Of a DNA stretch of 64,000 nt, positions 6,457 to 51,037 are shown in pieces (position 1 is the first letter of the stretch; each line of letters starts with the position of its first letter). Origin of the DNA: Octopus sinensis (Eukaryota). The notes beneath the pieces are model-generated. The model was not told where the DNA came from, ran no database searches, and saw only the letters and a program-made list of their open reading frames with translations. Both the position numbers and the translations under genes were made by a program. The stretch spans positions 31,806,001-31,870,000 of the forward strand of contig NC_043001.1 in NCBI RefSeq assembly GCF_006345805.1. Reading direction: 5' to 3'.

Positions 6457-6475
6457 TGTATGTATGTATGAATAT

Positions 6476-6700
6476 GTGCTGGCATAATCGTTAGCATGCC
6501 GGGCGAAATGCTTAACGGTATTTCGTCTGCCGTTACGTTCTGAGTTCATTTTCCGCCGAGGTCAACTTTGCCTTTCATCCTTTCGGGGTCGATTAAATAC
6601 GTACCAGTTACGCACTGGAGTCGATATAATCGACTTAATCCCTTTGTCTGTCCTTGTTTGTCCCCTCTATGTTTAACCCCCTGTGGACAATAATAAAAAA
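6476..6700 (+). mobile_element. SINE family B (CORE-like body)
   Basis: gccgggcgaaatg..ttctgagttca..ccgccgaggtcaactttgcctttcatcctttcggggtcgat..gtacc..tttgtcccctct. Confidence 0.9.
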
Positions 6701-6769
6701 GTATGTATGTATCTATGTACGTACGTATGTATGAACATGTCCATATTTGGATGTTTTGTTCTATGTATG

Positions 6770-14002: not shown

Positions 14003-14400
14003 CGGCACGTAGCCTAGTGCTTAATGTTCCCGACTGACGACTCATAATGCCGGGGTTCTGAGTTCAAATTCCGCCGAGGTCGACTTTGCCTTTCATTCTT
14101 TCGGGGTCGATTAAATAAGTACCAGTTACGGGGGTCGATGTAATCGACTTAATCCGTTTGTCTGACCTTGTTTGTCCCTTCTGTGTTTAGCCCCTTGTGG
14201 ATAAAGAAATAGGTATTTCGTATGCCGCTACGTTCTGAGTTCAAATTCCGTCAAGGTCGACTTTGCCTTTCATCCTTTCGGGGTCGATAAATCAAGTACC
14301 AGTTACGCAGTGGGGTCGATGTAATCGATTCAATCCCTTTGTCTGTCCATGTTTGTCCCCTCTATGTTTAGCTCTTTGTGGGCAATAAAGAAATATGAAA
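14003..14400 (+). mobile_element. Tandem partial family B SINEs
   Basis: ttctgagttcaaattccg..aggtcgactttgcctttcat occurs twice (about 14056 and 14233), each followed by the B tail. Confidence 0.85.
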
Positions 14401-17806: not shown

Positions 17807-18892
17807 GTATGTATGTTTGCCTACCTTTATTTCTATGATACAAATTATTATTATTTTTTTTAATACAAATACATACATACATACATATACAAAGACACAC
17901 ACTCATAGATGTATACATATATATATATATATATTATATATATTATATATATATATATATATATAGATAGATATAGATATATACGAAGGGCTTCTTTCCG
18001 TTTCCTTTTAGCAAATCCACTCACAAGGCTTTGGTCGTCCCAATGCTATAGTATTGAGCATTCATTCCAACGTTCTACATTTACACACACACACGCACAC
18101 ACACGCACACATACACATATACACACACATGCCAAAATATAGGTATTTCAGATAGATAGCCGTTTCGTAAACTTCACGTTGTACTAATTTCAGTACACGA
18201 AATTATACGTACATGTGTGCAGCAATGTGTATGCTCATAATTATACAACCCAATAATATATTCACAAATGAATACAGATAACTCATACGATAACTGGAAC
18301 ATCATAGTTGCATTTACGATACGAGTTGAATCGCAGATGGAACTGTGATGTTCCGTTGATCACGAAGGATTAACAAAGACAGCCACCCAATCGAAAAGAT
18401 TCTCAACAAAGGCAAAATTCACGCAAGGAAAGAAAAAGATGCAGATAGCTAAATGTGAAAACCTTTGTTGAGGGATATGGAAAATAGATATACGGAGAAA
18501 ACAAAAATATTCACAAATGGGAATGAATTAAAGGCTAATGCAAACATGAACTGCATATGTAAAAAAAATAGCTCATATGCTGCATCACATGCTCACATCG
18601 CAAAGAGAATTATATCGACCAAACAGAATCAAAATTAATAGATCAGGCCCGGGCACATAAACAGTAAATCAAATATTTATCTCATAGAAATGCTCCGTGA
18701 AGTTAACATCGACACATTTGTCTAAATAGAAAACTGAAAGTATTCCCATTTTTAAAAAATAAAGACAGAAAATGAGCTGCTACGAAAGGCAAAGGAAGTA
18801 TATAATATAAGAATTCTAAATCCGGAACTCTACTGGAAAAACTCAACGCCGCTACAAAAAAGAAGTATGCCTTATATGGATTGTCTTATATA

Positions 18893-19123
18893 GGCGGCGA
18901 GCTGGCAGAAACGGTAGCACGCCGGGCGAAATGTGTAGCCGTATTTCGTCTGCCGTTACGTTCTGAGTTCAAATCCCGCCGAGGTTGACTTTGTCTTTCA
19001 TCCTTTCGGGATCGATAAATTAAGTACCAGTTACGCACTGGGGTCGATGGAATCGACTTAATCGCTTTGTCTGTCCTTGTTTGTCCCCTCTGTGTTTGGC
19101 CCCTTGTGGGTAGTAAAGAAATA
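18893..19123 (+). mobile_element. Full-length family B SINE with perfect 20-bp TSD
   Basis: tatatggattgtcttatata at 18873-18892 and 19124-19143. Confidence 0.95.
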
Positions 19124-19224
19124 TATATGGATTGTCTTATATAAAGTGTACAAGAAAGTTGAAAATAGCGAAAAGTCCTCAACAAAACATGAAAATTTCC
19201 TTCCCTAAGATTTATACTCTTTTC

Positions 19225-20234: not shown

Positions 20235-21286
20235 CCCCTTTTTTCTTTTTTTTCATTTCTCTTTTCTTTTGTTCCTTTTCCTTTTCTTTTTTCTTTTTCT
20301 TTTTTTCTTTTTCTTTTTTCTTTTTCTATTTTAATTATTTTTTTTTGTTCTTTTCTTCCCTTTTACGATCCCTCTTGATCGAAAACCTACGCCACCCCCT
20401 TTTTTTGTTTCTTTTGTTTTTTGTTTTTTTCATCCCCCAAAAGAAAAGCTCTACCTTGTAACTTGTCCCATCTGTGTGCAGCCCTGTGTGGCCAATAAAG
20501 AAACTTATCTATATCTATCTATCTATATATACATATACACAAAAATACATATGCATACCTAAATATATGCATTATTTGTACATGTAGATGTATATAATAT
20601 ATTTTGCATATACGCATAAATATATGTATGTATATACGTATACATGCATGCATGCAAATATATAGATTGCTTCGATATTTAAACAGATACATTGATGCAC
20701 AGATAATACTGGAATCGCTATTCAGATTGACAGACAGATTGACAGACAGACAGCTGCAGAGATAGACTAAAAGATAGATTAACAGGCAAGTTGTTATGCA
20801 ACTACCCTCGTTGAAGTAGAGAAAGCGAGGCTATACTACTTCGTCATAAAATAGACTGCACGTCTACGTTTTAACTGATATTAACTAAATGTACCTTGTT
20901 GCTATAGGTTTCCGACAGGAGTCTTTAAACAGCAAATGTTATCTCTGTATCAGTACATATTTCTGTGAAATATGTTAGCTTGTATTGAATGTAGACAGAC
21001 GTATAGCAAAATGCTTCCGAATCACAATGAAATAGCCTCAACAGCAGCAAGTACAACAACAACAGCAGCAGCAGTAGTAGTAACAGCAACAACAATAACA
21101 ACAGCAATTGTAACAAAACATCAAAAACTTAAGTAGCAGAAATAAAATACTGATATTTTTACATGATATATATACAGACAAGTAAAAGGATGAAAATATT
21201 GGGAAAAATTAATAATAGTGATTTTATTTATAAGCCAAAAGAGGCCAAGACGTTTGGGCTTAGCACCAAGATGAAATATAAAATAT

Positions 21287-21404
21287 AAATAAATGCGCCC
21301 TTTTAAAGCCTAGCCAGGCTCATGGGCCCGTTTTCCCGGTTTCTATGGCGTATGTGTTCCCCTGCTGGACGGGACGTCAGTCCATCGCAGCGTTACTCAT
21401 TTTT
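21287..21404 (-). mobile_element. 3' half of SINE family C (V-domain-like) at the array's left edge
   Basis: Near-identical to 49553-49669 (ttttaaagc.tagccaggctcatggg..ccggtttcta.ggcgtatgtgttccc..gtccatcgcagcgttactcatttttg). Confidence 0.9.
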
Positions 21405-24400
21405 GCCAGCTGAGTGGACTGGAGCAACGTGCTTGTTTTTATGCCAGCTGAGTGGACTGGAGCAACGTGCTTGTTTTTATGCCATCTGAGTGGACTGGAG
21501 CAACGTGCTTGTTTTTATGTTATGCCATCTGAGTGGACTGGAGCAACGTGCTTGTTTTTATGCCAGCTGAGTGGACTGGGCAACGTGCTTGTTTTTATGC
21601 CATCTGAGTGGACTGGAGCAATGTGCTTGTTTTTATGCCAGCTGAGTGACTGGAGCAACGTGCTTGTTTTTATGCCATCTGAGTGGACTGGAGCAACGTG
21701 CTTGTTTTTATGCCAGCTGAGTGGACTGGAGCAACGTGCTTGTTTTTTATGCCATCTGAGTGGACTGGAGCAACGTGCTTGTTTTTATGCCACTGAGTGG
21801 ACTGGAGCAACGTGCTTGTTTTTATTTATGCCATCTGAGTGGACTGGAGCACGTGCTTGTTTTTATGCCAGCTGAGTGGACTGGAGCACGTGCTTGTTTT
21901 TATGCCATCTGAGTGGCCACTGTGAGCAACGGAGCAACGTGCTTTTGCCAGCTGTTTTGATGCCAGCTGAGTGTGACTGGAGCAACGTGCTTGTTTTTAT
22001 GATGCCAGCTGAGTGGACTGAGCAACGTGCTTGTTTTTATGCCGGCAGTCTGAATGCCACTGAGTGGGACTGTGAGCTAACGTGCTTGTTTTTTATGCAA
22101 TGCCAGCTGAGTGGACTGGAGCAACGTGCTTGTTTTTATGCCATCTCTGAAGTGGACTGGTAAGCACGTGCTTGTGTTTTCTTGTTTTTTTATGCCAGCT
22201 GAGTGGACTGGAGCAACGTGCTTTTTTTTATGCCATCTGAGTGTATCTCTGAGTGGACTGGTTTGGAGCGAGCTTGTGCTTGTTTTTATGCCAGCTGAGT
22301 GACTGGAGCAACGTGCTTGTTTTTATGCCATCTGAGTGGACTGGAGCAACGTGCTTGTTTTTTATGTTTATGCCAGCTAGTGGACCTGGAGAGCAAGAGC
22401 AACGTGCTTGTTTTTATGCCATCTGAGTGGACTGGAGCAACGTGCTTGTTTTTATGCCATCTGAGTGGACTGGAGCAACGTGCTTGTTTTTATGCCATCT
22501 GAGTGGACTGGAGCAATGTGCTTGTTTTTTATGCCAGCTGAGTGGACTGGAGCAACGTGCTTGTTTTTATGCCATCTGAGTGGACTGGAGCAATGTGCTT
22601 GTTTTTATGCCAGCTGAGTGGACTGGAGCAACGTGCTTGTTTTTATGCCATCTGCTGATGGACTGGAGCAACGTGCTTGTTTTTGCCATCTGAGTGGACT
22701 GGAGCAACGTGCTTTTTTTTATGCCATCTGATGCCATCCATGAGTGGACTGGAGCATGTGCTTTTTTTATGCCAGCTGAGTGGACTGGAGCAACGTGCTT
22801 GTTTTTATGCCATCTGAGTGGACTGGAGCAATGTGCTTGTTTTTTGCCATCTGAGTGGACTGGAAGCAACGTGCTTGTTTTTATGCCATCTGAGTGGACT
22901 GGAGCAACGTGCTTGTTTTTATGCCATCTGAGTGGACTGGAGCAACGTGCTTGTTTTTTATGCCATCTGAGTGGACTGGAGCAATGTGCTTGTTTTTTAT
23001 GCCAGCTGAGTGGACTGGAGCAACGTGCTTGTTTTATGCCATCTGAGTGGACTGGAGCAACTTGTTTTTGCCATCTGTTTGTTATTTTATGCCATCTGAG
23101 TGGACTGGAGCAACGTGCTTGTTTTTATGCCAGCTGAGTGGACTGGAGCAACGTGCTTGTTTTTTATGCATGCCAGCTGAGTGGACTGGAGCAACGTGCT
23201 TGTTTTTATGCCATCTGAGTTGGAGGGAGCAACGTGCTTGTTTTTATGCCATCTGAGTGGACTGAGCAACGTGCTTGTTTTTATGCCAGCTGAGTGGACT
23301 GGAGCAACGTGCTTGTTTTTTATGCCATCTGAGTGGACTGGAGCAACGTGCTTGTTTTTATGCCAGCTGAGTGGACTGGAGCAACGTGCTTGTTTTTATG
23401 CCAGCTGAGTGGACTGGACAACGTGCTTGTTTTTATGCCAGCTGAGTGGACTGGAGCAACGTGCTTGTTTTTATGCCAGCTGAGTGGACTGGAGCAACGT
23501 GCCTTGTTTTTATGTATGCCATCTGAGTGGACTGGAGCAACGTGCTTGTTTTATTTTTTTTGGCCATGCTGAGTGGACTGGAGCAACGTGCTTGTTTTTA
23601 TGCCATCTGAGTGACTGGAGCAACGACGTGCTTTGTTTTTTTATGCCACTGAGTGGACTGGAGCAATGTGCTTGTTTTTATGCCAGCTGAGTGGACTGGA
23701 GCAATGTGCTTGTTTTTATGCCAGCTGAGTGGACTGGAGCAACGTGCTTGTTTTTATGCCAGCTGAGTGGACTGGAGCAACGTGCTTGTTTTTATGCCAG
23801 CTGAGTGGACTGGAGCAACGTGCTTGTTTTTTTATGCCAGCTGAGTGGACTGGAGCAACGTGCTTGTTTTTATGCCATCTGAGTGGACTGGAGCAACGTG
23901 CTTGTTTTTATGCCAGCTGAGTGGACTGGAGCAACGTGCTTGGTTTTATGCCAGCTGAGTGGACGGAGCAACGTGCTTGTTTTTATGCCAGCTGAGTGGA
24001 CTGGAGCAACGTGCTTGTTTTTATGCCAGCGAGTGGACTGGAGCAACGTGCTTGTTTTTTATGCCAGCTGAGTGGACTGCAGCAACGTGCTTGTTTTTAT
24101 GCCAGCTGAGTGGACTGGAGCAACGTGCTTGTTTTTATGCCAGCTGAGTGGACTGGAGCAACGTGCTTTTTTTATGCCAGCTGAGTGGACTGGAGCAACG
24201 TGCTTGTTTTTATGCCATCTGAGTGGACTGGAGCAATGTGCTTGTTTTTATGCCAGCTGAGTGGACTGGAGCAACGTGCTTGTTTTTATGCCTCTGAGTG
24301 GACTGGAAGCAACGTGCTTGTTTTTATGCCATCTGAGTGGACTGGAGCAACGTGCTTGTTTTTATGCCATCTGAGTGGACTAAGCAATGTGCTTGTTTTT

Positions 24401-25842
24401 ATGCCAGCTGAGTGGACTGGAGCAACGTGCTTGTTTTTTGCCAGCTGAGTGGACTGGAGCAACGTGCTTGTTTTTATGCCAGCTGAGTGGACTGGAGCAC
24501 GTGCTTGTTTTTATGCCACTGAGTGGACTGGAGCAACGTGCTTGTTTTTATGCCAGCTGAGTGGACTGGAGCAACGTGCTTGTTTTTATGCCAGCTGAGT
24601 GGACTGGAGCAACGTGCTTGTTTTTATGCCAGCTGAGTGGACTGGAGCAACGTGCTTGTTTTTATGCCAGCTGAGTGGACTGGAGCAACGTGCTTGTTTT
24701 TATGCCATCTGAGTGGACTGGAGCAATGTGCTTGTTTTTATGCCAGCTGAGTGGACTGGAGCAACGTGCTTGTTTTTATGCCAGCTGAGTGGACTGGAGC
24801 AACGTGCTTGTTTTTATGCCAGCTGAGTGGACTGGAGCAACGTGCTTGTTTTTATGCCAGCTGAGTGGACTGGAGCAACGTGCTTGTTTTTATGCCATCT
24901 GAGTGGACTGGAGCAACGTGCTTGTTTTTATGCCATCTGAGTGGACTGGAGCAACGTGCTTGTTTTTATGCCAGCTGAGTGGACTGGAGCAACGTGCTTG
25001 TTTTTATGCCAGCTGAGTGGACTGGAGCAACGTGCTTGTTTTTATGCCAGCTGAGTGGACTGGAGCAACGTGCTTGTTTTTATGCCAGCTGAGTGGACTG
25101 GAGCAACGTGCTTGTTTTTATGCCAGCTGAGTGGACTGGAGCAACGTGCTTGTTTTTATGCCATCTGAGTGGACTGGAGCAACGTGCTTGTTTTTATGCC
25201 AGCTGAGTGGACTGGAGCAACGTGCTTGTTTTTATGCCAGCTGAGTGGACTGGAGCAACGTGCTTGTTTTTATGCCAGCTGAGTGGACTGGAGCAACGTG
25301 CTTGTTTTTATGCCATCTGAGTGGACTGGAGCAACGTGCTTGTTTTTATGCCAGCTGAGTGGACTGCAGCAACGTGCTTGTTTTTATGCCATCTGAGTGG
25401 ACTGGAGCAACGTGCTTGTTTTTATGCCATCTGAGTGGACTGCAGCAACGTGCTTGTTTTTATGCCAGCTGAGTGGACTGGAGCAACGTGCTTGTTTTTA
25501 TGCCAGCTGAGTGGACTGGAGCAACGTGCTTGTTTTTATGCCAGCTGAGTGGACTGCAGCAACGTGCTTGTTTTTATGCCAGCTGAGTGGACTGCAGCAA
25601 CGTGCTTGTTTTTATGCCAGCTGAGTGGACTGGAGCAACGTGCTTGTTTTTATGCCAGCTGAGTGGACTGGAGCAACGTGCTTGTTTTTATGCCAGCTGA
25701 GTGGACTGGAGCAACGTGCTTGTTTTTATGCCATCTGAGTGGACTGGAGCAACGTGCTTGTTTTTATGCCAGCTGAGTGAACTGGAGCAACGTGCTTGTT
25801 TTTATGCCATCTGAGTGGACTGGAGCAACGTGCTTGTTTTAT
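21405..25842. repeat. 38-bp minisatellite, ~115 units, consensus GCCA(G/T)CTGAGTGGACTGGAGCAACGTGCTTGTTTTTAT
   Basis: Head-to-tail units with no spacers; 4438 bp/38 = about 117 nominal units; indel-rich before about 24500 and clean after. Confidence 0.97.
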
Positions 25843-25960
25843 CGACCCTGAAAGGCTAAAAGGTAAAGTTAACTTCGGCAAAATTTCAGCTCAGAGCATA
25901 AAGAGCCGGAAGAAATGCAGCTAAACATTTTGTCTGATGCGCTAACGATTTTACCAGCTC
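25843..25960 (-). mobile_element. Diverged 5' half of a family B SINE at the array's right edge
   Basis: cgaccctgaaaggctaaaaggtaaagttaacttcggcaaaatttcagctcagagc..ctaaacattttg..gctaacgatttaccagctc aligns to reverse family B copies (33145-33372, 47361-47610). Confidence 0.8.
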
Positions 25961-25966
25961 ATCACC

Positions 25967-26037
<71 letters not shown>

Positions 26038-30983: not shown

Positions 30984-33144
30984 CCTATTTATAAATGTTC
31001 TAAAATCTTCGCAGCTTTGGCTTTTTATCTCATTCTGAAAACATTTATATATATATATATATATACATATACACTAAAAAACGACTTAGCAAATCCTATC
31101 AGATGGTGCTATTAAGTTAGGCATGGCCTGGTCCAGTCTTTGGTCGAAACATATCTAAGTTATCTAAGTATAGGCATGTATATAATTTATCTGTATATTT
31201 ATATACATATATATTTTCGTAATATGTATGCATAAAGACACATACACGCATCTCTGTGTCTATACATATGTATGCGTGCCTATGTGTGTATGTGTGTGTG
31301 TGTACGTGTGCGTGTGTGTTACTGGAAACCTTAATATAAGATGGTACAGATCGAAATGTAAATTCTTTTTTATATTATTCAATAGACTTTGACTGTCTCT
31401 GTAGCTAATGCACAGTGATGACTGACTATATCGCACAGAAACACACAGGTATATACATACATGGATACCTACCTACATATAAATACCTAGATACATTAAG
31501 TAGTTATTTCATTGAAGTAGCATTTTACAATGAAGTTGCTATCAACCATTGATCATCAGCATTGAATAAATACTTAGGTATGCTGTTATTTTAGTCGTTC
31601 AGCTGATATAACTAAACACTTTACTAATGTCTCTTATACTTAACACCAATCACAACTAAATTTCTAGAATAAGTGTTGTTCTGTATATCAAGTTATCTCC
31701 AACAAATGTTCGTTTCTACGAATACATCTTTTCGTCTTCCTTTTCCAACCTTCTCTCTTTCTTTCATGCTCATCATTCTTTCTTTCTTCTTCTCTTTCCT
31801 CTCTATTTTCTTTCTTCCTCTCTATGACAACAGAGATATATATCAGAAGATCGTTCATAGCATTTGCATGTACTTTGCCAGTCGATAAGTCTGCATAGTT
31901 ATAGTGTATTATTTCACGACACCGATGAACGTCGTATTATGAAATGCAGCCTCTTAGCCAGCAAACCCTGCACTCTGCTTTCAATTTCCGTTTTTTTTAT
32001 CACCTTACTAATATAGTTAATATTATACAGAAAAGAATGAACGTCATTGAATCTCAAGTGCTCATCACTTCACAATTACGAGGCTTAGTGCTTGCCTAAT
32101 AAACCATCATACCATACATTGCATTACAGCCGCTTCTCTTTTGCATCTCACTCCCACTTTCGAACTTAGTCGGAATCATTATTACTTTTATGTTTTTCTT
32201 CCGAGAGTCAATAAAATGAGCATCATTTATGTATTAAAGCATCAATTTTACGGACCAAACTATTTAATTCTGAATCTGGTAATATTAAGTGGTTGAGAAA
32301 CAAATCTATATCCCTTGGATAAAACACTAGGTCAAACCTCGAAGACATATTAGCTAGTCTCTTGCTATGCAAATAAAATTAAATATGTTATCTAAAAGAC
32401 ATAATGGAATTGTTATAATAGAAAAAATTTGATTATCACCCGCGTGTAAACTGACTTGTTCCGCGCATGCGCGGTCATTAAGCCTACATTTTTTCTTCTT
32501 AAATGAGGAAATAGACCACAAAAAGATAATTCTTCGCGAAAGCCAACCGATTTCAGTGTCTCTTGAACTGAACACCTCAAGATTACGAAACACTGTTTAA
32601 CTGTACGTAGTATCATTCCTTGCAGTACTGAGGTATTTCTATACAGTTAGGTATAATGGGCTAGTGTGTTAAATGCCTTGCTAAAGAGCTCAAATCTGCA
32701 TCAGAGACAGAATGTGACCCGTTCAAAATTTCAGTTGACTGTTTGTCTCTCAGGAACTATTATAATAGAAACCTTTGACATACTATATTGTACAAACACT
32801 CCTTTCAAGAAGAACTGAACCATTTGTGGTGGCTACTGTGGTGACACTTTGTTTTAAAGTTGGAGACTGTAGCGTCAAAACGGCTCTCCCAACCTTTAAT
32901 TGGTAAAAAATTCGACGCTTTGTTTACTCAAAATAATTGAGGAAATGAGTGAATTTACAGAACTAATCACAAATTCCGCCTTGAAGGGCAAAAATATAAC
33001 GGAGATACGGTGTTCCTCACAATCTTTGGCGCTTTATGCGATACATGGAGCAATATTTTTGAATATAAAACGAGACATCCGATCGACTCGAAGCGAACAT
33101 ATTGCTTTAACCACCACATCATCATCATCATCATCATCTATTTC

Positions 33145-33372
33145 TATTTCTTTACTACCCACAAGGGACTAAACACAGAGGGGACAAACAAGGACTGACA
33201 AACGGATTAAGTCGATTACATTGACCCCCGTGCGTAACTGGTGCTTAATTTATCGACCCCGAAAGGATGAAAGGCAAGGTCGACCTCGGCGGAATTTGAA
33301 CTCAAAACGTAACGGCAGACGAAATACGGCTACGCATTTCGCCCGGCGTGCTAACGTTTCAGCCAGCTCGCC
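33145..33372 (-). mobile_element. Family B SINE inserted in (CAT)n
   Basis: Full reverse copy; ccacatcatcatcatc on both sides. Confidence 0.9.
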
Positions 33373-33649
33373 ACATCATCATCATCCTCCTCCTCCTCAT
33401 CATCATCTTCATCATCTTCATCATCATCAGCAGCAGTAGCACCACCACCACCAACACCACCACCACCAATAACAACAACAACAACAACAACAGCGACAAC
33501 AATAAATATGGATACAATTGAATGCCTACTCATTGATTAATTATAGATATTTTAATGTGGTCGATATTTTTAAACGAATGCCAACTATTTATAAAGGGAT
33601 TAAAGTAAATCAGTTCAAATCTCGTAATAATTGACAAATTTGATGAATT

Positions 33650-37499: not shown

Positions 37500-39400
37500 G
37501 AAAAAATAAGTCAAAATAGAAAATGCTAAAATAATTTTATAAAGAACATTTCAGTACCGGTTTCAGTCATTTTGAGACCTTTTCAACTGTAACGATTAAA
37601 TAATTAAATTTAGAAAAATTAAAAGAAATGTTTTTTTAAAAGAATATTTGTATAGTGTTCAAATATAAGTGGCATTTTCCTTGTTTCTGCCTTGCTCTGT
37701 CTCTCTTGTTCACACTTGTGGGTTCGAGGTCGTTGTGAATTCTTTTGGGAGTGCCTTGATTGTTGTATTTTGAATGGTCAGTGGCCGCTAGCAGTTCATG
37801 ACAGTATTTCTATTGAAAGGTTTGTCTATAGAATTTGCGTAGGTGTTATACTAAAAAGCATTAGCGATAAAGTTAGGAAGTAGAAGGGGGAGAAGAAGAA
37901 GAAGAAGAAGAAGAAGAAGGAGAAGAAGAAGAAGAAGAAGAGGAGGTAGAAGATGATGATGATGATGATAATGATGATGATGAAGAAGAAGAAGAAGAAA
38001 GAGGAGGGAGAATATGAATGAGTGGCAGTAGTGAGGTGTTGCATGACTTAAAGTTGGCACGCTATGGGTTATAGCTGTGATTGGGGCTGATTTGTAGTGG
38101 ATTCTTAAGAATGTAATATTTGCGTGTGTATTTGTGCTATTCTAAGGCAGAGGGGTATATATCCTTTGTCGTAAACCCGTTCAGAAGGGGCTTATATTTT
38201 GTAATAAAGAGAGTTTCTTTACTTATTCGTTGGCTCGAGGTTGTATTGTCTCTGAATTGGTAGAGGGGGAAAATCCTGAAGTTTGGTGTTTTGTTGTCGG
38301 CGCAAGTATCTATGTGTTGGCTGAAAGTTATTTTTCTGTTTTGGGGAATTTTTATCTGGATCTGTACAGGGCCATTCTTTTACACAAACTATTTTTCGTT
38401 TGGCCTATGTATTGCTCTTGACACCTAGAGCAAGTTAGTGTTTATATCAGGTTCTCCGAAGCACATGTGAAGTTGCTTTTCACTGCAAACCGTTGTCCCT
38501 GTTTGAAGGAGAACTATGATCCTTCAATTAGATAATCGCATATCCCGCAATTTGGTCTTCCACATTTTTTTACTGTCGGCTTCTGTGTTGTAGAGTGTTT
38601 TCGGGCTTGTGTTAGGAGACTTTTCATAGATTTAGGCTGTCTCTTGCTTTTTATGATCATGTGTGTTTGGAGAATTGTGTTCATTCTGTGGTCTTTTTTT
38701 AGCAGGGGTATGTTTTGGAGGATGGTGTCGAAGGCCTCATTGTTGAGAGGGTTGTGTGTGGAGATGTATAGTAAGGGTTTTGGTCGTAAATTTTTCTTTG
38801 ATTTGAGATGTCTGAGTTCTTGGATGTTGAGTTGGAGGGCACGTGGAATGCATATGTCAAAAAGGGAAGGTGGGTAGTTCCTGGTAATGAGAGTATCTTT
38901 TAGTTCTTGTAGTCGTGTGTCTCTGGTGTTTGTATTAGAAACTATAGGGCATATCCTTTTTGCTAGATTGAAGGGGATGTTCATTCTGGTGTGTCTGGGA
39001 TGGCATGAATTGAAAGGAAGATATTGCTTAGAATCTGTAGGCTTATAGTATATATCTGTTTCTATTACATTATTAAATTTCTTAATAAGGATATCGAGGA
39101 AGGGGAGTTGTTGCTGGCTATATTTTATCGTGAATTGGATGTTTACGTCCAGTCCATTTAAAATTGCTTGGAATTCTTTGAGTTTCTCTATATTTTCATG
39201 CCAAAGGATGAAACAGTCATCTAGGTATCTCTTCCAGTTGTTTTCTATGTAGAGGGAGAAAGGGCTGCCATATCTTTCTAGAACCTTACGATACAGACTG
39301 ATTTCTAAATAGCCCATGACTAGGTTGGCAAAGGAGGGGTCATTCGCGTACCTATAGCAGTCCCCGATTTTTGTCGGTAGAAGTTGTCTTTGAAGGCAAA
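37500..39400 (-). mobile_element. 5'-truncated Penelope-like element: RT C-half, GIY-YIG endonuclease and downstream pLTR-like region
   Basis: FYRQKSGTAIGT..; ORF 38514-39317 WKRYLDDCF, LPFLDI, YYKPTD, CHP, CGRPNCGIC; frameshifted NLIYTLTCSRCQEQYIGQT..RM (GIY-YIG); decayed hammerhead at 37552-37590 on the same strand. Confidence 0.9.
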
Positions 39401-45995: not shown

Positions 45996-46014
45996 CATGT
46001 ATATATTATATATA

Positions 46015-46240
46015 GGCGGCGAGCTGGTAGAAACGTTAGCACGCCGGCGAAATTCGTAGCCGTATTTCGTCTGTCGTTACGTTCCGAGTTCAAATTCGCC
46101 GAGGTCGACTTTGCCTTTCATCCTTCGGGGTCGATAAATTAAGTACCTTACGCAATGGGGTCGATGTAGTCGACTTAATCCCTTTGTCTGTCCTTGTTTG
46201 TCCCCTCTGTGTTTAGCCCCTTGTGGGTAGTAAAGAAATA
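46015..46240 (+). mobile_element. SINE family B
   Basis: Full copy ggcggcgagctgg..gtaaagaaata. Confidence 0.9.
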
Positions 46241-46572
46241 TATAATATATATATGTATGTATATATGTATATATACGTAAATAAATATGTGTGCGTGTGC
46301 GTTTTCCCATATTTCTGTCTAAGTTCAACAACCTATCTATATATATATAGACACAGACTATATATAGATATAGGGCATTGAACTCACAGATTTCTGATAT
46401 ATATATACATATATATACACAAACAGAGAGATAGATAGCTAGATCGATAATGGGCTGAGCTTTCAGGAATTTATTCTTGCCGTTCGCTTTTACTGATTGG
46501 GAGAAGATACTGCCTCATAATTTGTAGCAACTTGAATTATGTACATACAGATACGCACACACTCCCACAGTT

Positions 46573-47118: not shown

Positions 47119-47360
47119 TGAGAGAGTATACACATGCGTTCGCGCACATTTGCATGTAACCATACATTAATACATGCATGTATAGTACCAGCGCTACATG
47201 TTAAAACAACGAAGCACTTGTTAATTTCTTGGAAAACCATCAAGGCAGTTGCACTGTTCTTTATAGATATTGCAGTAGCTATTTAGAGCTATGTAAATAC
47301 GGTTGTTGAGGACAGCATTTTGGGTATAAGAACACAATAATGTCAGAAACATTAATATAT

Positions 47361-47610
47361 ATTTCTTTACTACCCACAAGGGGCTAAACACAGAGGGGAC
47401 AAACAAGGACAGACAAAGGGATTAAGTCGATTACATCAACCCCAGTGCGTAACTGGTACTTAATTTATCGACCCCGGAAGGATGAAAGGCAAAGTCGACC
47501 TCGGCGGAATTTGAACTCGGAACGTAACGACAGACGAAATACGGCTACGCATTTCGCCCGGCGTGCTAACGTTTCTGCTAGCTCGCCGCCATATAGCCAG
47601 CTCGCCGCCA
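47361..47610 (-). mobile_element. SINE family B with duplicated 5' end and TSD
   Basis: gc[c/t]agctcgccgccata twice (about 47576-47612); cagaaacattaatata on both sides. Confidence 0.9.
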
Positions 47611-48705
47611 TACTTTAATGTACAGAAACATTAATATAAGCTACTAAACACTCGATCTCTAGTGAGATTCCGTATCAAAATGGTTATTCGTTTTTCTCAA
47701 AGGAAATGTAAGGAATCGAAACAGAACGTGGAATTGAATGTGATACGTTAACGAATTATGTTTGTTACAAGCTTTGCTAATAATGGTTTCAAATTTTGGC
47801 ACAAGAGCAGTAATTTAGGCTGAAGGACTAAGTCAATTACAATGACCCTTGAGCTCAACTGATATTTACGTTATAGACCCCGAAAGGATAAAAGGTAAAG
47901 TCTACCTTGGCGGAATATAAATTCAGTACGTAACAGTGGATGAAATGCCGCTTAGACATTTTGCCCAGCGTATAAACGGTTCTACCAGGTCGCCGTTTTA
48001 ATATTATGGTGATGGGGCGAAATTAAAGAAAATCTAGATGATTAGTTAAGAAAGTACATTTGTACAATCGAGGGACGACCACCATGAATGAAATCAAACA
48101 GAGAAAGAATGAAGCACCCAAGACCATTTTCAGGGCTTTCAAGGCTGGTATTACAAAGAAAGAACTGTAATTCATAGGTTAATATAGACTGTACACTTGC
48201 TTACAATACTGACAACCGAGTGAACTCAGTTATGGGTCTCTATGAGTCTCCATGCACGGTCTCGTGTGCTGGTTCTAAACTGATTGATGGAAACAGAATA
48301 GTAACAGTAACCATAATGTGTCATGTACCACCTGACCTTCTCGCTTACATTTTTTCTCTTCAAAATTTCATTCACAAAGCTCAGGTCGCCCCAAAACTGT
48401 AGTAAAGGAAGATCTTGGTAGTAAAGTAAAATTCTTAAACATACAATCATACCTGCACTCTTCGGAATGTTTCTTTAGGAAGTTTCTTCCTCCAACAAGC
48501 ATCCCAGTTTAGTCATACTTTGTTCAAAACAAGCGGATGTATAGTCTCTGGTTCCAGTAATGGTTGTGGTATAAACTCAAAATAAAAGAGCTGATAGTCC
48601 TGCAAAACACCAGTAGACTATTACACCAAAATGGCAGACCAAATGCCGCTAAGCATTTTGCTCGGCACTTTAACAATTCTGCTAGTTTACCGCCATTTTT
48701 TTTTT

Positions 48706-48872: not shown

Positions 48873-49552
48873 AGAAAACAATGTGGGTATTAGTACACGT
48901 AGTACACGTGGGAAAGGAAGACACACCTCGTATATCCGCATTAAGTGAGCTAACCGATTACACCAACCTACACACGGATTTTTTTCCCGTTAGATTTTAG
49001 AACTGCGTTAAATAATATCGTTTAAATAATCGGCAATGGTCAGAATAATGAAAAGCTCTTGCTTCTAATGTGATATACTGGTGCCTCTGTAGCACGAATG
49101 TCTGCAAAACACATGCGCACACACTCATATACTCATATGCTCTTAAGTGCATGCAGCACATAGGCCTAACAGACACCAGAAAGACTATATTTATTGATAA
49201 GATGTAAAATGTATGCTCAGTGAATTCTGCTAGAAATAATGCTGGCGTTTCACTGAAAAGAGAAGGTCATCGAAATATTTAAATGTTAAGTACCTATCAA
49301 TGGCAATTGACTGCGTGCCTCTGTGGTAAGTTGTGTGGGCTATAGTCCTATCTCAGTTTTCGAGGTCCCTTTTAGTATTTTATTAATTCTCTCATGTATT
49401 AACAAACAACTCTCATACGATTTGTTTTATGAGTACTACCGCCAATTGCTGCATTATCATTTATCATATACAGTACAAGCCCTTTTATATGGCTTCCAGA
49501 AACCCGGGAATACTGTGCAATATTGTGCTATATACTGTATCCTGTAAAATGA

Positions 49553-49804
49553 AATAAATGTGCCCTTTTAAAGCTTAGCCAGGCTCATGGGACCGGTTTC
49601 CCGGTTTCTACGGCGTATGTGTTCCCCAGCTGGATGGGACGCCAGTCCATCGCAGCGTTACTCATTTTTGCCAGCTGAGTGGACTGGAGCAACGTGAAAT
49701 GAAGTGTTTTGCTCAAGAACACAACGCGTCGACCGGTCCAGGAATCGAAACCACAATCTTACAATCACGGTGCTGGCACCCTAACCACTAAGCCACGCAC
49801 CTCC
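49553..49804 (-). mobile_element. Full-length SINE family C (tRNA head plus V-domain-like 3' part)
   Basis: ggaggtgcgtggcttagtggttagggtg..ggtttcgattcc..cacgttgctccagtccactcagctggcaaaaatgagtaacgctgcgatggactggcgtccc; contains the 27-bp array core once (49670-49696). Confidence 0.9.
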
Positions 49805-50113
49805 ACTTCTGTTTCCTGTACAGAAAAAAAAAACACTTTGTTTTTGAAGTTGGTTAATTTGCAGAGGCTCTGTTAAAAATAACTTTGTTCTTTATTTTTT
49901 AAGTGGACTGATAAAGATTAAACACTCTCTGCTTTAGAATTGTGTCAATTTGTACCTGTATCTGTTAAAGAAAATCATGCTCATACTTTTCTTCGTTTAA
50001 ATTTCATCCTGTAAAACTTTATGCAGTATACATGATGCAGTAAGATATATTTCAAGAATTTTATGTGGATTAATAAATATCAAACAGAGCCTTTATTTTA
50101 TATTTTAAATATA

Positions 50114-51037
50114 CAGGGTGTCCATAAAGTTTCTTTACCATTTAAAAAGATTATTATAAAGGCAGTTGATGAGATATGTTAATCAGATTTATTTTATTTT
50201 AATAATTGTTTATTAAAGTTGTTATTGATATTAAATTTTTGTGTTTCAGATACTCTGTTGATGGAAGGGAGCTGATTCACTGAATCCGTATAAAATGAGG
50301 AAGAAGCATTCCTCAAGCGAGTTTGTTTTAGTGACGAGGCGACTCTTCATGTTTCAGGGAAATTAAACAGACACAATGTGAGAATCTGGGGATCAGAACA
50401 CCCCCATGTGACTAGGGAGCTTCAACGGGATATCCAAAAGTGAATGTGTGGTGTGGAATCATGTGCAATCGAATAATAGGTCCATTTTTCTTCAACGAGG
50501 TAACAATTACAGCAGATATTTACCTCGACCTTCTGACCGAATATGTGGCACCACAACTGATTGATTTACAACTAGCCATCCTTTTCCAGCAAGATGGTGC
50601 ACCACCACTTTGGGGACGACATGTTCGTCAGTTCCTTAATCAAACATTTACAGACCGATGGATTGGAAGTGATGGGCCAATTCCATGGCCATCACGTTCG
50701 CCAGATATTACTCCTTTGGACTTCGTTTTATGGAGTTATGTAAAAGATATCGTGTATCAAACAAAGATACGGGACATTGCTGACTTGAAGCAATGAATTT
50801 GTAATGCCATTACCACCGTTGATGAGACTGTCCTACAGCGAACATGGCAAAAAAATCGAGTACCGTCTTGATGTGCTTCGCGCAACTAATGGTGTCCATA
50901 TTGAGGTCTATTAAATAACAGTTAAAAAAAAACTTTAATAAACAATTATTACAATAAAACAAATCTGGTTAAGATATCTTGTCAACTGCCTTTGTAATAA
51001 AATTTTAAAATTGTAAAGAGACTTTATGGACACTCTG
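50114..51037 (+). mobile_element. Internally deleted Tc1/mariner-superfamily DD41D (rosa/Visitor-type) transposon
   Basis: ~90-bp TIRs cagggtgtccataaagt.. / ..actttatggacactctg with TA flanks; FSDEA..., FQQDGAPP...WPSRSPDITPLDF with 41 residues between the second and third D; DNA-binding domain missing; stop and frameshifts. Confidence 0.85.

What the first reader, a model, noticed from the sequence alone, without database searches (positions are those of the whole stretch)
21287..25960. 4.4-kb minisatellite grown from the junction of a chimeric SINE, with both parents visible in the window
Seen: 27 of the 38 bp of the unit (gccagctgagtggactggagcaacgtg) occur once, exactly, inside the full family C SINE (49670-49696). 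The remaining cttgtttt(t)at matches family B cttaatttat|cgacccc (about 33248, 47460). The left flank of the array is the 3' half of SINE C and the right flank is the 5' half of SINE B, both on the minus strand. In sense, the locus reads B-head, then (ataaaaacaagcacgttgctccagtccactcagctggc)x~115, then C-tail. The unit boundary falls on a motif both families share (B gATAAATTAAGT/CAC; C gcAAAAATGAGTAA), and there is GTG microhomology at the C/B switch. Inference: a template switch between two SINE families at their shared motif created a duplicable junction, which then amplified by slippage, unequal exchange or rolling circle. This looks like a satellite caught soon after birth.
Basis: partly seen in the sequence, partly recalled or inferred. 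Interest (0 to 1): 0.8.

Follow-up and report, generated by a model that had tools for sequence, protein, structure and literature searches.

The report
Minisatellite born at a SINE-in-SINE junction
A 4.4-kb run of about 115 copies of a 38-base unit grew from the seam where a young octopus SINE abuts an old, decayed SINE of another family. It is a tidy but ordinary example of mobile-element DNA turning into a tandem repeat.

Summary
A 38-bp tandem array occupies 21405-25842 (113-116 units). 27 bp of the unit match the full family-C SINE at 49670-49696 exactly. The other 11 bp continue the B-like SINE head on the right flank. The left flank is the C 3' half (94.5% identical to the full copy). 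So the unit spans a B-like/C junction, and the array arose after that junction formed.

The proposed origin is only partly supported. The two halves differ about ten-fold in age. The C tail has about 3-4 private changes in 140 bp and keeps its CpGs. The head is only 70% identical to the B consensus, keeps 5 CpGs against 16, and has a mutated B box. Directly after the C tail lies a weak remnant of the B 3' end, followed by the same 9-mer (TATTATTAA) that precedes the head.

The better reading is a young, 5'-truncated CORE-type SINE nested in an old resident B-like SINE. The 37/38-bp seam was then duplicated and expanded by slippage or unequal exchange. A one-step chimeric retrotransposition fits less well.

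SINE- and transposon-derived tandem repeats are a known kind. No octopus genome could be searched at DNA level, so whether this locus is unique remains untested.

The parts
21405..25842 (-). 38-bp minisatellite, 113-116 units. Sense unit: ATAAAAACAAG + CACGTTGCTCCAGTCCACTCAGCTGGC. Recurrent variants are G5T, C24T and G18C, numbered on the + strand unit GCCAGCTG...
   Evidence: TRF; wrap-around alignment; 27-mer scan
21264..21404 (-). 3' part of a young family-C (CORE-type) SINE. It covers the end of the CORE, the body and the A/T-rich tail, and runs without a break into the first unit's 27-mer (to 21431).
   Evidence: 94.5% identity to the full copy; about 3-4 private changes in 140 bp; CpG 9 versus 8
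25843..25966 (-). 5' half (tRNA-like head) of an old, decayed B-like SINE, complete at its 5' end. B homology continues through ATAAAACAAGCAC into the last unit (to 25830).
   Evidence: nhmmer E=3.2e-23, B profile positions 3-138; 70% identity to the B consensus; CpG 5 versus 16; B box GAGCTGAAATTTT versus GAGTTCAAATTCC
21223..21248 (-). Putative remnant of the 3' terminus of the same old B-like SINE: TTGGCCTCTTTTGGCTTATAAATAAA versus TTAGCCCCTTGTGGGTAGTAAAGAAA.
   Evidence: 19/26 match. P=0.03 against the whole B 3' half and P=0.0012 against the last 46 nt, from shuffles of the 106-nt flank. Alignment with seven B 3' ends. Weak and post hoc.
21209..21217 (-). Candidate target-site duplication, downstream copy (sense TATTATTAA).
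   Evidence: Same 9-mer as 25967-25975. A match of at least 8 nt occurs in 33 of 1206 control pieces of the window.
25967..25975 (-). Candidate target-site duplication, upstream copy. It directly abuts the head's first base and forms the edge of the perfect (TAA)23 run at 25968-26036.
   Evidence: Sequence; TRF
49547..49806 (-). Full-length family-C SINE, the reference parent, holding the exact 27-mer at 49670-49696. It is flanked by a 14-bp target-site duplication (49533-49546 and 49807-49820, 12/14 identical).
   Evidence: CORE similarity to the MIR core, score 17.5 against a null of 8.3 +/- 1.3
47357..47591 (-). Family-B SINE, a young reference copy. Others are at 33142-33376(-), 18891-19126(+), 46013-46243(+) and 6475-6701(+).
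   Evidence: nhmmer and BLAST
47819..47996 (-). Another old B-like copy, used to judge the age of the array's head. A 5' fragment of a further copy lies at 48630-48695(-).

Best explanation
The proposed history has four steps.
1. An old tRNA-derived B-like SINE sat at this locus on the minus strand. Its candidate target-site duplication is TATTATTAA.
2. Much later a copy of the active CORE-type SINE family C landed inside it in the same orientation. The C copy was 5'-truncated within its CORE domain and joined to the B-like sequence at a CAC microhomology. About 50-60 bp of the B-like middle was lost.
3. The seam read ...GGGTCG|ATAAAACAAG-CACGTTGCTCCAGTCCACTCAGCTGGC|AAAAATGAGTAAC.... It carried two A-rich motifs 37-38 bp apart. 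The 37/38-bp segment between the bars was tandemly duplicated by replication slippage or a microhomology-mediated duplication.
4. The duplicate then expanded to about 115 units through replication slippage, unequal sister-chromatid exchange or gene conversion.

The array has no indicated function. It is a by-product of nested retrotransposition plus tandem-repeat dynamics.

What is shown: the junction origin of the unit, the seamless flanks, the age difference between the flanks, and the homogeneity of the array. What is inferred: the order of events, the truncation and deletion, and the mechanism of duplication and expansion.
For: - Unit composition and seamless flanks.
- Age contrast. The C tail has about 3-4 private changes in 140 bp and its CpGs are retained. 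The head is 70% identical to the B consensus and 62-64% to three other old B-like copies, a star-like pattern. It has 5 CpGs against 16 and four changes in the B box.
- A B 3'-terminus remnant directly follows the C tail (P=0.0012 in the restricted test). It is followed by the 9-mer that also precedes the head (joint shuffle P=0.0002, post hoc).
- C is demonstrably mobile and young. The full copy has a 14-bp target-site duplication.
- 5'-truncated SINE copies and SINE-next-to-SINE insertions occur elsewhere in the window, at 14055-14397.
- Only 9 singleton substitutions occur in 4,438 bp of array.
- Literature. TE-derived minisatellites and the two initiation models (flanking 5-10 bp direct repeats, or slipped-strand mispairing) are described in PMC3389668. 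SINE-derived satellites whose terminal units extend into SINE sequence are described in PMC10702118.
Against: - The B 3' remnant is short (19/26). It was found after looking for it, and the whole-flank test is only P about 0.03-0.06.
- The 9-mer is low-complexity and borders a (TAA)n run.
- No target-site duplication of the C insertion itself is visible, so a target deletion has to be assumed.
- The head could in principle belong to an unsampled B-like subfamily with a different, CpG-poor master. Only about 105 kb of octopus DNA was available (the window plus L001 and L002).
- The A-rich direct repeat is imperfect (6/8). It predicts a GGCAAAACAAG boundary rather than the observed GGCATAAAAACAAG.
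Confidence: 0.65

Rival explanations
1. During one retrotransposition event the reverse transcriptase copied C RNA from its 3' end. It then switched at a CAC/GTG microhomology to a B-type SINE RNA, producing a chimeric SINE. The junction of that SINE later amplified.
For: The two parts have the same orientation. A 3-nt microhomology sits at the switch. The head reaches its exact 5' end. Template switching is the accepted route of module exchange between SINEs (PMC4758252).
Against: Both halves would then be the same age, yet they differ about ten-fold in divergence and in CpG retention. The head's B box is mutated, so it does not look like a copy of a Pol III-active master. A B 3' remnant and the repeated 9-mer lie outside the C tail rather than directly flanking it. 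No other copy of the junction occurs in the window, L001 or L002.
Confidence: 0.17
2. The array belongs to a dispersed family. This could be a mobile composite SINE-VNTR-SINE element (SVA-like) or a pre-existing 38-bp satellite present at many loci. This locus would then be one copy, not the birthplace.
For: This cannot be excluded, because no octopus genome could be searched at DNA level. In squamates, SINE-derived satellites often occur at several loci (PMC10702118). The sense strand of the unit has no T4 run, so Pol III read-through is conceivable.
Against: Both ends of the array run in register into the parental SINE sequences. The head is decayed and its promoter box is damaged. Nothing similar was found in the other 60 kb of the window or in 42 kb of O. 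vulgaris and O. bimaculoides DNA. There were no protein-database ORFs from such arrays and no hits in the three DNA collections, although those collections are not expected to hold octopus DNA.
Confidence: 0.07
3. Assembly artefact. The array, or much of its length, comes from mis-assembly or a noisy long-read consensus across a much shorter repeat.
For: The left half shows many indels (109 and 55 inserted bases in the two left quarters, against 8 and 0 in the right quarters) but almost no extra substitutions. That is the error profile of an unpolished long-read consensus.
Against: Unit variants (G5T, C24T, G18C) are organised in blocks along the array. Both flanks are unique and join in register. 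An assembler does not invent 113 phased units. At most the copy number and the small indels are unreliable.
Confidence: 0.06

Closest known systems
SINE-derived satellites (sSats) of squamate reptiles (Vassetzky et al. 2023, PMC10702118)
   Same: Both are tandem arrays whose unit is a piece of SINE sequence. The terminal units extend into SINE sequence up to the element's end, and homogeneity is high in long arrays.
   Different: There the unit comes from one SINE family, is usually longer, and occurs at several to many loci. Here the unit is 38 bp, spans the seam between two different SINE families, and is known from one locus only.
TE-derived minisatellites in human (Ahmed and Liang 2012, PMC3389668; Jurka and Gentles 2006 on Alu-derived minisatellites, as cited there)
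   Same: Both are minisatellites seeded inside transposable elements, more often young ones. Initiation is proposed to occur by slippage between short flanking direct repeats or by slipped-strand mispairing, followed by polar expansion.
   Different: Those units lie within a single element. Here the direct-repeat motif pair exists only because two elements were juxtaposed, and it fits the boundary imperfectly.
Satellite seeding by double or nested TE insertion (McGurk and Barbash 2018, PMC5932611)
   Same: In both, insertion of one element into or next to another creates a junction that becomes the substrate for tandem expansion by unequal exchange.
   Different: In Drosophila the repeated unit is a whole TE plus target-site duplication, from two insertions of the same family. 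Here only a 38-bp seam between different families was amplified.
SVA (SINE-VNTR-Alu) composite retrotransposon of hominids (my own knowledge; mentioned in PMC3389668)
   Same: The architecture is similar: SINE-like 5' part, a VNTR of roughly 35-50 bp units, then a SINE-like 3' part.
   Different: SVA is a mobile family with thousands of copies. There is no evidence here of mobility or of further copies, and the 5' part is a decayed dead copy.
CORE-SINEs, including the octopus SINE of Ohshima and Okada 1994 (called OR1 in PMC4824008 and OR2 in PMC4758252)
   Same: Family C carries a CORE-like central domain. The unit's 27-mer lies in that domain.
   Different: This describes the parent element, not the array. 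I could not compare C with the published OR1/OR2 sequences.

Membership tests
Minisatellite | Head-to-tail tandem array with a unit of about 10-100 bp and an array of roughly 0.5-30 kb | tested here: met
   Period 38, 113-116 copies, 4.44 kb
SINE/TE-derived tandem repeat (sSat-type) | The unit is homologous to SINE sequence | tested here: met
   27/38 bp are identical to family C at 49670-49696. The other 11 bp continue the B-like head.
SINE/TE-derived tandem repeat (sSat-type) | Terminal units extend into SINE sequence up to the element's terminus | tested here: met
   Left end runs into the C tail (94.5%). Right end runs into the B-like head, to its first base.
SINE/TE-derived tandem repeat (sSat-type) | Satellite-like behaviour: several loci, high copy number, subtelomeric or heterochromatic location | not testable with these tools
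   No DNA-level search of an octopus genome was possible. None were seen in the window, L001 or L002.
Chimeric retrotranscript made by RT template switching | The two fused parts were inserted in one event, so they have equal age at the locus | tested here: not met
   Head about 30% diverged, CpG 5 versus 16. Tail about 2.5% diverged, CpG 9 versus 8.
Chimeric retrotranscript made by RT template switching | One target-site duplication directly flanks the 5' end of the 5' part and the tail of the 3' part | tested here: not met
   The only repeat of the head's upstream flank (TATTATTAA) lies 47 bp beyond the C tail. It sits behind a B-type 3' remnant. The evidence is weak.
Chimeric retrotranscript made by RT template switching | Same orientation, with microhomology at the switch point | tested here: met
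   Both parts are on the minus strand, with a CAC overlap. This is equally expected for microhomology-mediated 5' joining of a truncated insertion.
CORE-SINE (parent family C) | Conserved CORE central domain | tested here: met
   Local alignment to the MIR core scores 17.5 against shuffles of 8.3 +/- 1.3 (maximum 15).
CORE-SINE (parent family C) | tRNA-derived head with A and B boxes, and insertion with target-site duplications | tested here: inconclusive
   A 14-bp target-site duplication (12/14) flanks the full copy. The head looks tRNA-like by eye (GGCTTAGTGGTTAGGG ... GGTTTCGATTCC). ARAGORN calls no tRNA in the window and Rfam finds nothing.
Minisatellite initiation by flanking short direct repeats (Haber and Louis model, as described in PMC3389668) | The founder unit is flanked by direct repeats of 5-10 bp | tested here: inconclusive
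   AAAACAAG and AAAATGAG lie 37-38 bp apart (6/8, sharing AAAA). The observed boundary GGC|ATAAAAA is not the one simple slippage between them would give.
SVA-like mobile composite (SINE-VNTR-SINE) | Many dispersed copies with variable VNTR length and their own target-site duplications | not testable with these tools
   No octopus-wide DNA search was possible. The head's promoter box is decayed, which argues against activity.

The most novel reading that the evidence does not exclude
The B-like-head / 38-bp VNTR / CORE-SINE-tail composite is not a one-off. It would be the founder or a member of a mobile, SVA-like 'SINE-VNTR-SINE' family, or of a spreading young satellite in Octopus. That would give a dated, parent-resolved example of satellite or composite-retrotransposon birth in a cephalopod.
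Probability: 0.07. Interest if true: 0.6.

Novelty: new member of a known kind. Interest (0 to 1): 0.3.

Why it matters
Most satellites and minisatellites are too old for their origin to be read. Here both parental sequences, the seam and the array are all legible in one locus. It can therefore serve as a worked example of how nested retrotransposon insertions seed tandem repeats.

It is also a candidate hypervariable marker in Octopus. It does not change current understanding, because TE-derived and SINE-derived tandem repeats are well documented. No function is indicated.

Tried and rejected
1. Exact 27-mer scans (G/T at position 5) of the metagenome, prokaryotic-genome and viral collections gave 0 hits. 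These collections are not expected to hold octopus DNA, so the result says little.
2. A protein-route search for other arrays used a 113-aa read-through translation of the + strand consensus. There were no hits at E<=1e-3. The minus-strand translation was not searched.
3. Sampling octopus DNA through homologues of the window's Penelope-like ORF gave L001 (O. vulgaris) and L002 (O. bimaculoides). Each holds one B or B-like copy and no array. The yield per look-up was too low to continue.
4. An origin of the unit from C alone was rejected. The 11-mer matches the neighbouring C sequence only 4/11 without gaps. The array abuts GGGTCG exactly where the B-type ATAAA motif begins.
5. Hairpin-driven instability was rejected. 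Unit dimers fold no better than shuffles (z = -0.8 and -1.1).
6. The remainder of the B-like element was sought among the strong hits. The only nearby B 3' fragment (20457-20504) is on the opposite strand.
7. Literature searches for an octopus satellite of this sequence, or for the sequence strings themselves, found nothing relevant.
8. Rfam and ARAGORN on the window found nothing.
9. Pfam on four TE-like ORFs found nothing.
Full report
**What is there**

TRF finds one long array at 21400-25840, with period 38, 116.1 copies and score 4601. A wrap-around alignment to the consensus GCCAGCTGAGTGGACTGGAGCAACGTGCTTGTTTTTAT resolves 113 units between 21405 and 25842.

The 27-mer GCCAGCTGAGTGGACTGGAGCAACGTG occurs 87 times at up to 3 mismatches, where none is expected by chance. 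Its single occurrence outside the array is an exact match at 49670-49696.

That site lies inside a full-length SINE on the minus strand, 49547-49806 (family C). The element is flanked by a 14-bp target-site duplication, 12/14 identical.

**Flanks**

The left flank, together with the first 27-mer (21287-21431), is 94.5% identical to the 3' half of that C copy.

The right flank (25830-25967) matches the 5' half of the window's B SINEs. nhmmer gives E=3.2e-23 over B profile positions 3-138. Identity is only 70-72%, whereas the B copies are 86-95% identical to each other.

In sense orientation (minus strand) the locus reads:
- B-like head ...CAGGGTCG,
- then ATAAAACAAG-CACGTTGCTCCAGTCCACTCAGATGGC,
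- then about 112 further units, ATAAAAACAAG-CACGTT...GGC,
- then AAAAATGAGTAACGCTGCGATGG... to the C tail.

The 11-mer is the continuation of the B-type motif GGGTCG-ATAAAttAAG-yAC. It is not collinear with C, matching only 4/11 without gaps.

The unit is therefore a junction sequence, and the array must post-date the junction. The one correction is that the head is B-like rather than a member of the window's B family.

**What the parents are**

Family C carries a CORE-like central domain. Its segment TGTGTTCTTGAGCAAAACACTTCATTTCACGTTGCTCCAGTCCACTCAGCTGGCAAAAATG aligns to the CORE of mammalian MIR with a score of 17.5. Shuffles give 8.3 +/- 1.3 with a maximum of 15.

An octopus CORE-SINE has been known since Ohshima and Okada 1994. 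It is cited as OR1 in PMC4824008 and as OR2 in PMC4758252. The unit's 27-mer lies in the CORE.

B is a tRNA-like-headed SINE. A 90% identical copy is present in O. vulgaris (L001).

**The two halves are not the same age**

I polarised the differences between the array's C part and the full C copy with three diverged C-like copies. The array's C part shows about 3-4 private changes in roughly 140 bp and has 9 CpGs against 8.

The head looks very different:
- It is 70% identical to the B consensus.
- It is 62-64% identical to three other old B-like copies (47819-47996, 48630-48695 and L002:15568-15751). Those are themselves 60-66% identical to each other and 71-76% to the consensus. This is a star-like pattern of independent decay.
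- It has 5 CpGs where the consensus has 16.
- Its B box reads GAGCTGAAATTTT instead of GAGTTCAAATTCC.

A chimera made in one retrotransposition event from two active SINE RNAs should have halves of equal age and a head close to a functional master. Neither holds.

**A remnant beyond the C tail**

Directly after the A/T-rich C tail, on the same strand, 21223-21248 reads TTGGCCTCTTTTGGCTTATAAATAAA. The last 26 nt of B read TTAGCCCCTTGTGGGTAGTAAAGAAA, which is a 19/26 match. Shuffles of the 106-nt flank give P=0.03 against the whole B 3' half and P=0.0012 against its last 46 nt.

Five bases further on comes TATTATTAA (21209-21217). The same 9-mer directly precedes the head's first base (25967-25975), where it has grown into a perfect (TAA)23 run. 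A match of that length occurs in 33 of 1206 control pieces of the window. The joint shuffle P is 0.0002.

These tests were made after seeing the pattern. They count as supporting evidence, not proof.

Together with the age contrast they favour the following history. An old B-like SINE, bounded by a TATTATTAA target-site duplication, received a young C copy in the same orientation. That copy was 5'-truncated in its CORE and joined at a CAC microhomology. About 50-60 bp of the B-like middle was lost.

5'-truncated SINE copies and back-to-back SINE insertions occur elsewhere in the window. At 14055-14212 and 14212-14397 lie two truncated B copies. Each is closer to the consensus (96% and 92%) than to the other (90%), so they are independent insertions.

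**How the array grew**

The seam placed two A-rich motifs 37-38 bp apart: ATAAAACAAG from the B-like element and CAAAAATGAG from the CORE. This is the configuration of the flanking-direct-repeat model of minisatellite initiation, as summarised in PMC3389668.

The fit is imperfect. The motifs share AAAA and 6/8 positions. Simple slippage between them would give GGCAAAACAAG, but the units read GGC-AT-AAAAA-CAAG. The founder duplication therefore had breakpoints TCG|AT and GGC|AA, with at most 1 nt of microhomology. The five-A form (38 bp), rather than the head-proximal four-A form (37 bp), is the one that was amplified.

Single-strand folding of unit dimers is no better than shuffles (z -0.8 and -1.1). 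Hairpins are therefore not indicated as a driver.

**State of the array**

Apart from three recurrent variants, only 9 substitutions occur in 4,438 bp, about 0.2%. The recurrent variants are G5T (41 units), C24T (11 units, a CpG to TpG change that nearly always occurs on G5T units) and G18C (6 units, mostly near the head end).

The array is thus far more uniform than the roughly 2.5% divergence of its own C flank. Either it expanded recently or it is continuously homogenised.

The left part tends to alternate G and T units. The right part is mostly G units.

Inserted bases fall from 109 and 55 in the two left quarters to 8 and 0 in the right quarters, with no matching rise in substitutions. 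Two explanations are possible: real slippage debris in an older left part with polar growth at the head end, or long-read consensus noise. I cannot tell which. Copy number should be treated as approximate.

**What could not be done**

No tool here searches an octopus genome at DNA level. The 27-mer scan of the metagenome, prokaryotic and viral collections found nothing, as expected. A translated consensus of the array found no predicted protein.

Two octopus loci fetched through a Penelope-like ORF of the window hold B or B-like copies but no array.

So does the decisive comparison with the orthologous site in other species.

**Comparison with known systems**

Several close precedents exist:
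- SINE-derived satellites with terminal units running into SINE ends (PMC10702118).
- A limpet satellite derived from a Nin-SINE (PMC11121367).
- TE-derived minisatellites, which make up about 23% of human minisatellites (PMC3389668).
- Satellite seeding by double or nested TE insertion (PMC5932611).

The present case is a new member of that kind. Its particular feature is that the amplified unit is the 38-bp seam between two different SINE families, with both parents still legible.

**Verdict**

Interest is modest.

Noticed in passing
window 25968-26036: A perfect (TAA)23 microsatellite directly abuts the 5' end of the B-like head. It looks as if it grew out of the TATTATTAA target-site duplication, whose other copy (21209-21217) stayed short.
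   Followed up: partly
window 21405-25842: Every unit carries an E-box. It is CAGCTG in the consensus, and the common G5T variant turns it into CATCTG, which is also an E-box. That gives about 113 E-boxes in 4.4 kb. No test of any regulatory meaning was made.
   Followed up: no
window 21480-23650: The left half of the array is rich in small and partial-unit indels but has almost no extra substitutions. The right quarter (24735-25842) is nearly perfect. This could be polar growth or long-read consensus noise.
   Followed up: partly
window 14055-14397: Two 5'-truncated family-B SINE copies lie head to tail (B positions 71-235, then 51-236). Each is closer to the consensus (96% and 92%) than to the other (90%). 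They are independent insertions, not a tandem duplication.
   Followed up: yes
window 47577-47614: The B copy at 47357-47591 has an 18-19 bp duplication of its own 5' end (gctagctcgccgccatat / agccagctcgccgccatac).
   Followed up: no
window 38514-39317 (-): A 267-aa ORF is a fragment of a Penelope-like retroelement. Its homologues in O. vulgaris, O. bimaculoides, Argonauta hians and bivalves carry PF26215, GIY-YIG (PF01541) and RT (PF00078) domains. A direct Pfam scan of the ORF itself returned nothing, which I cannot explain.
   Followed up: partly
window 50440-50796 (+): A 118-aa ORF looks to me like the C-terminal part of a mariner/Tc1-type transposase. The Pfam scan gave no hit.
   Followed up: partly
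window 49533-49546 and 49807-49820: The full-length C SINE is flanked by a 14-bp target-site duplication (TACTGTATCCTGTA / TTCTGTTTCCTGTA, 12/14). This indicates a fairly recent retrotransposition.
   Followed up: yes
window 47819-47996 (-), 48630-48695 (-); L002 15568-15751 (-): Old B-like SINE copies share GCAAAATG.TTAGCGGCATTT where the young B family has GCGAAATGCGTAGCCGTATTT. This suggests an older B-like subfamily, present also in O. bimaculoides. The young B family was seen (90% identity) in the O. vulgaris locus L001.
   Followed up: partly
window 1-64000: The window is saturated with microsatellites (144 TRF rows, including long TA, TCTA, TGTA and AAT runs). It has no Rfam or tRNA hit and no obvious host exon.
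   Followed up: no
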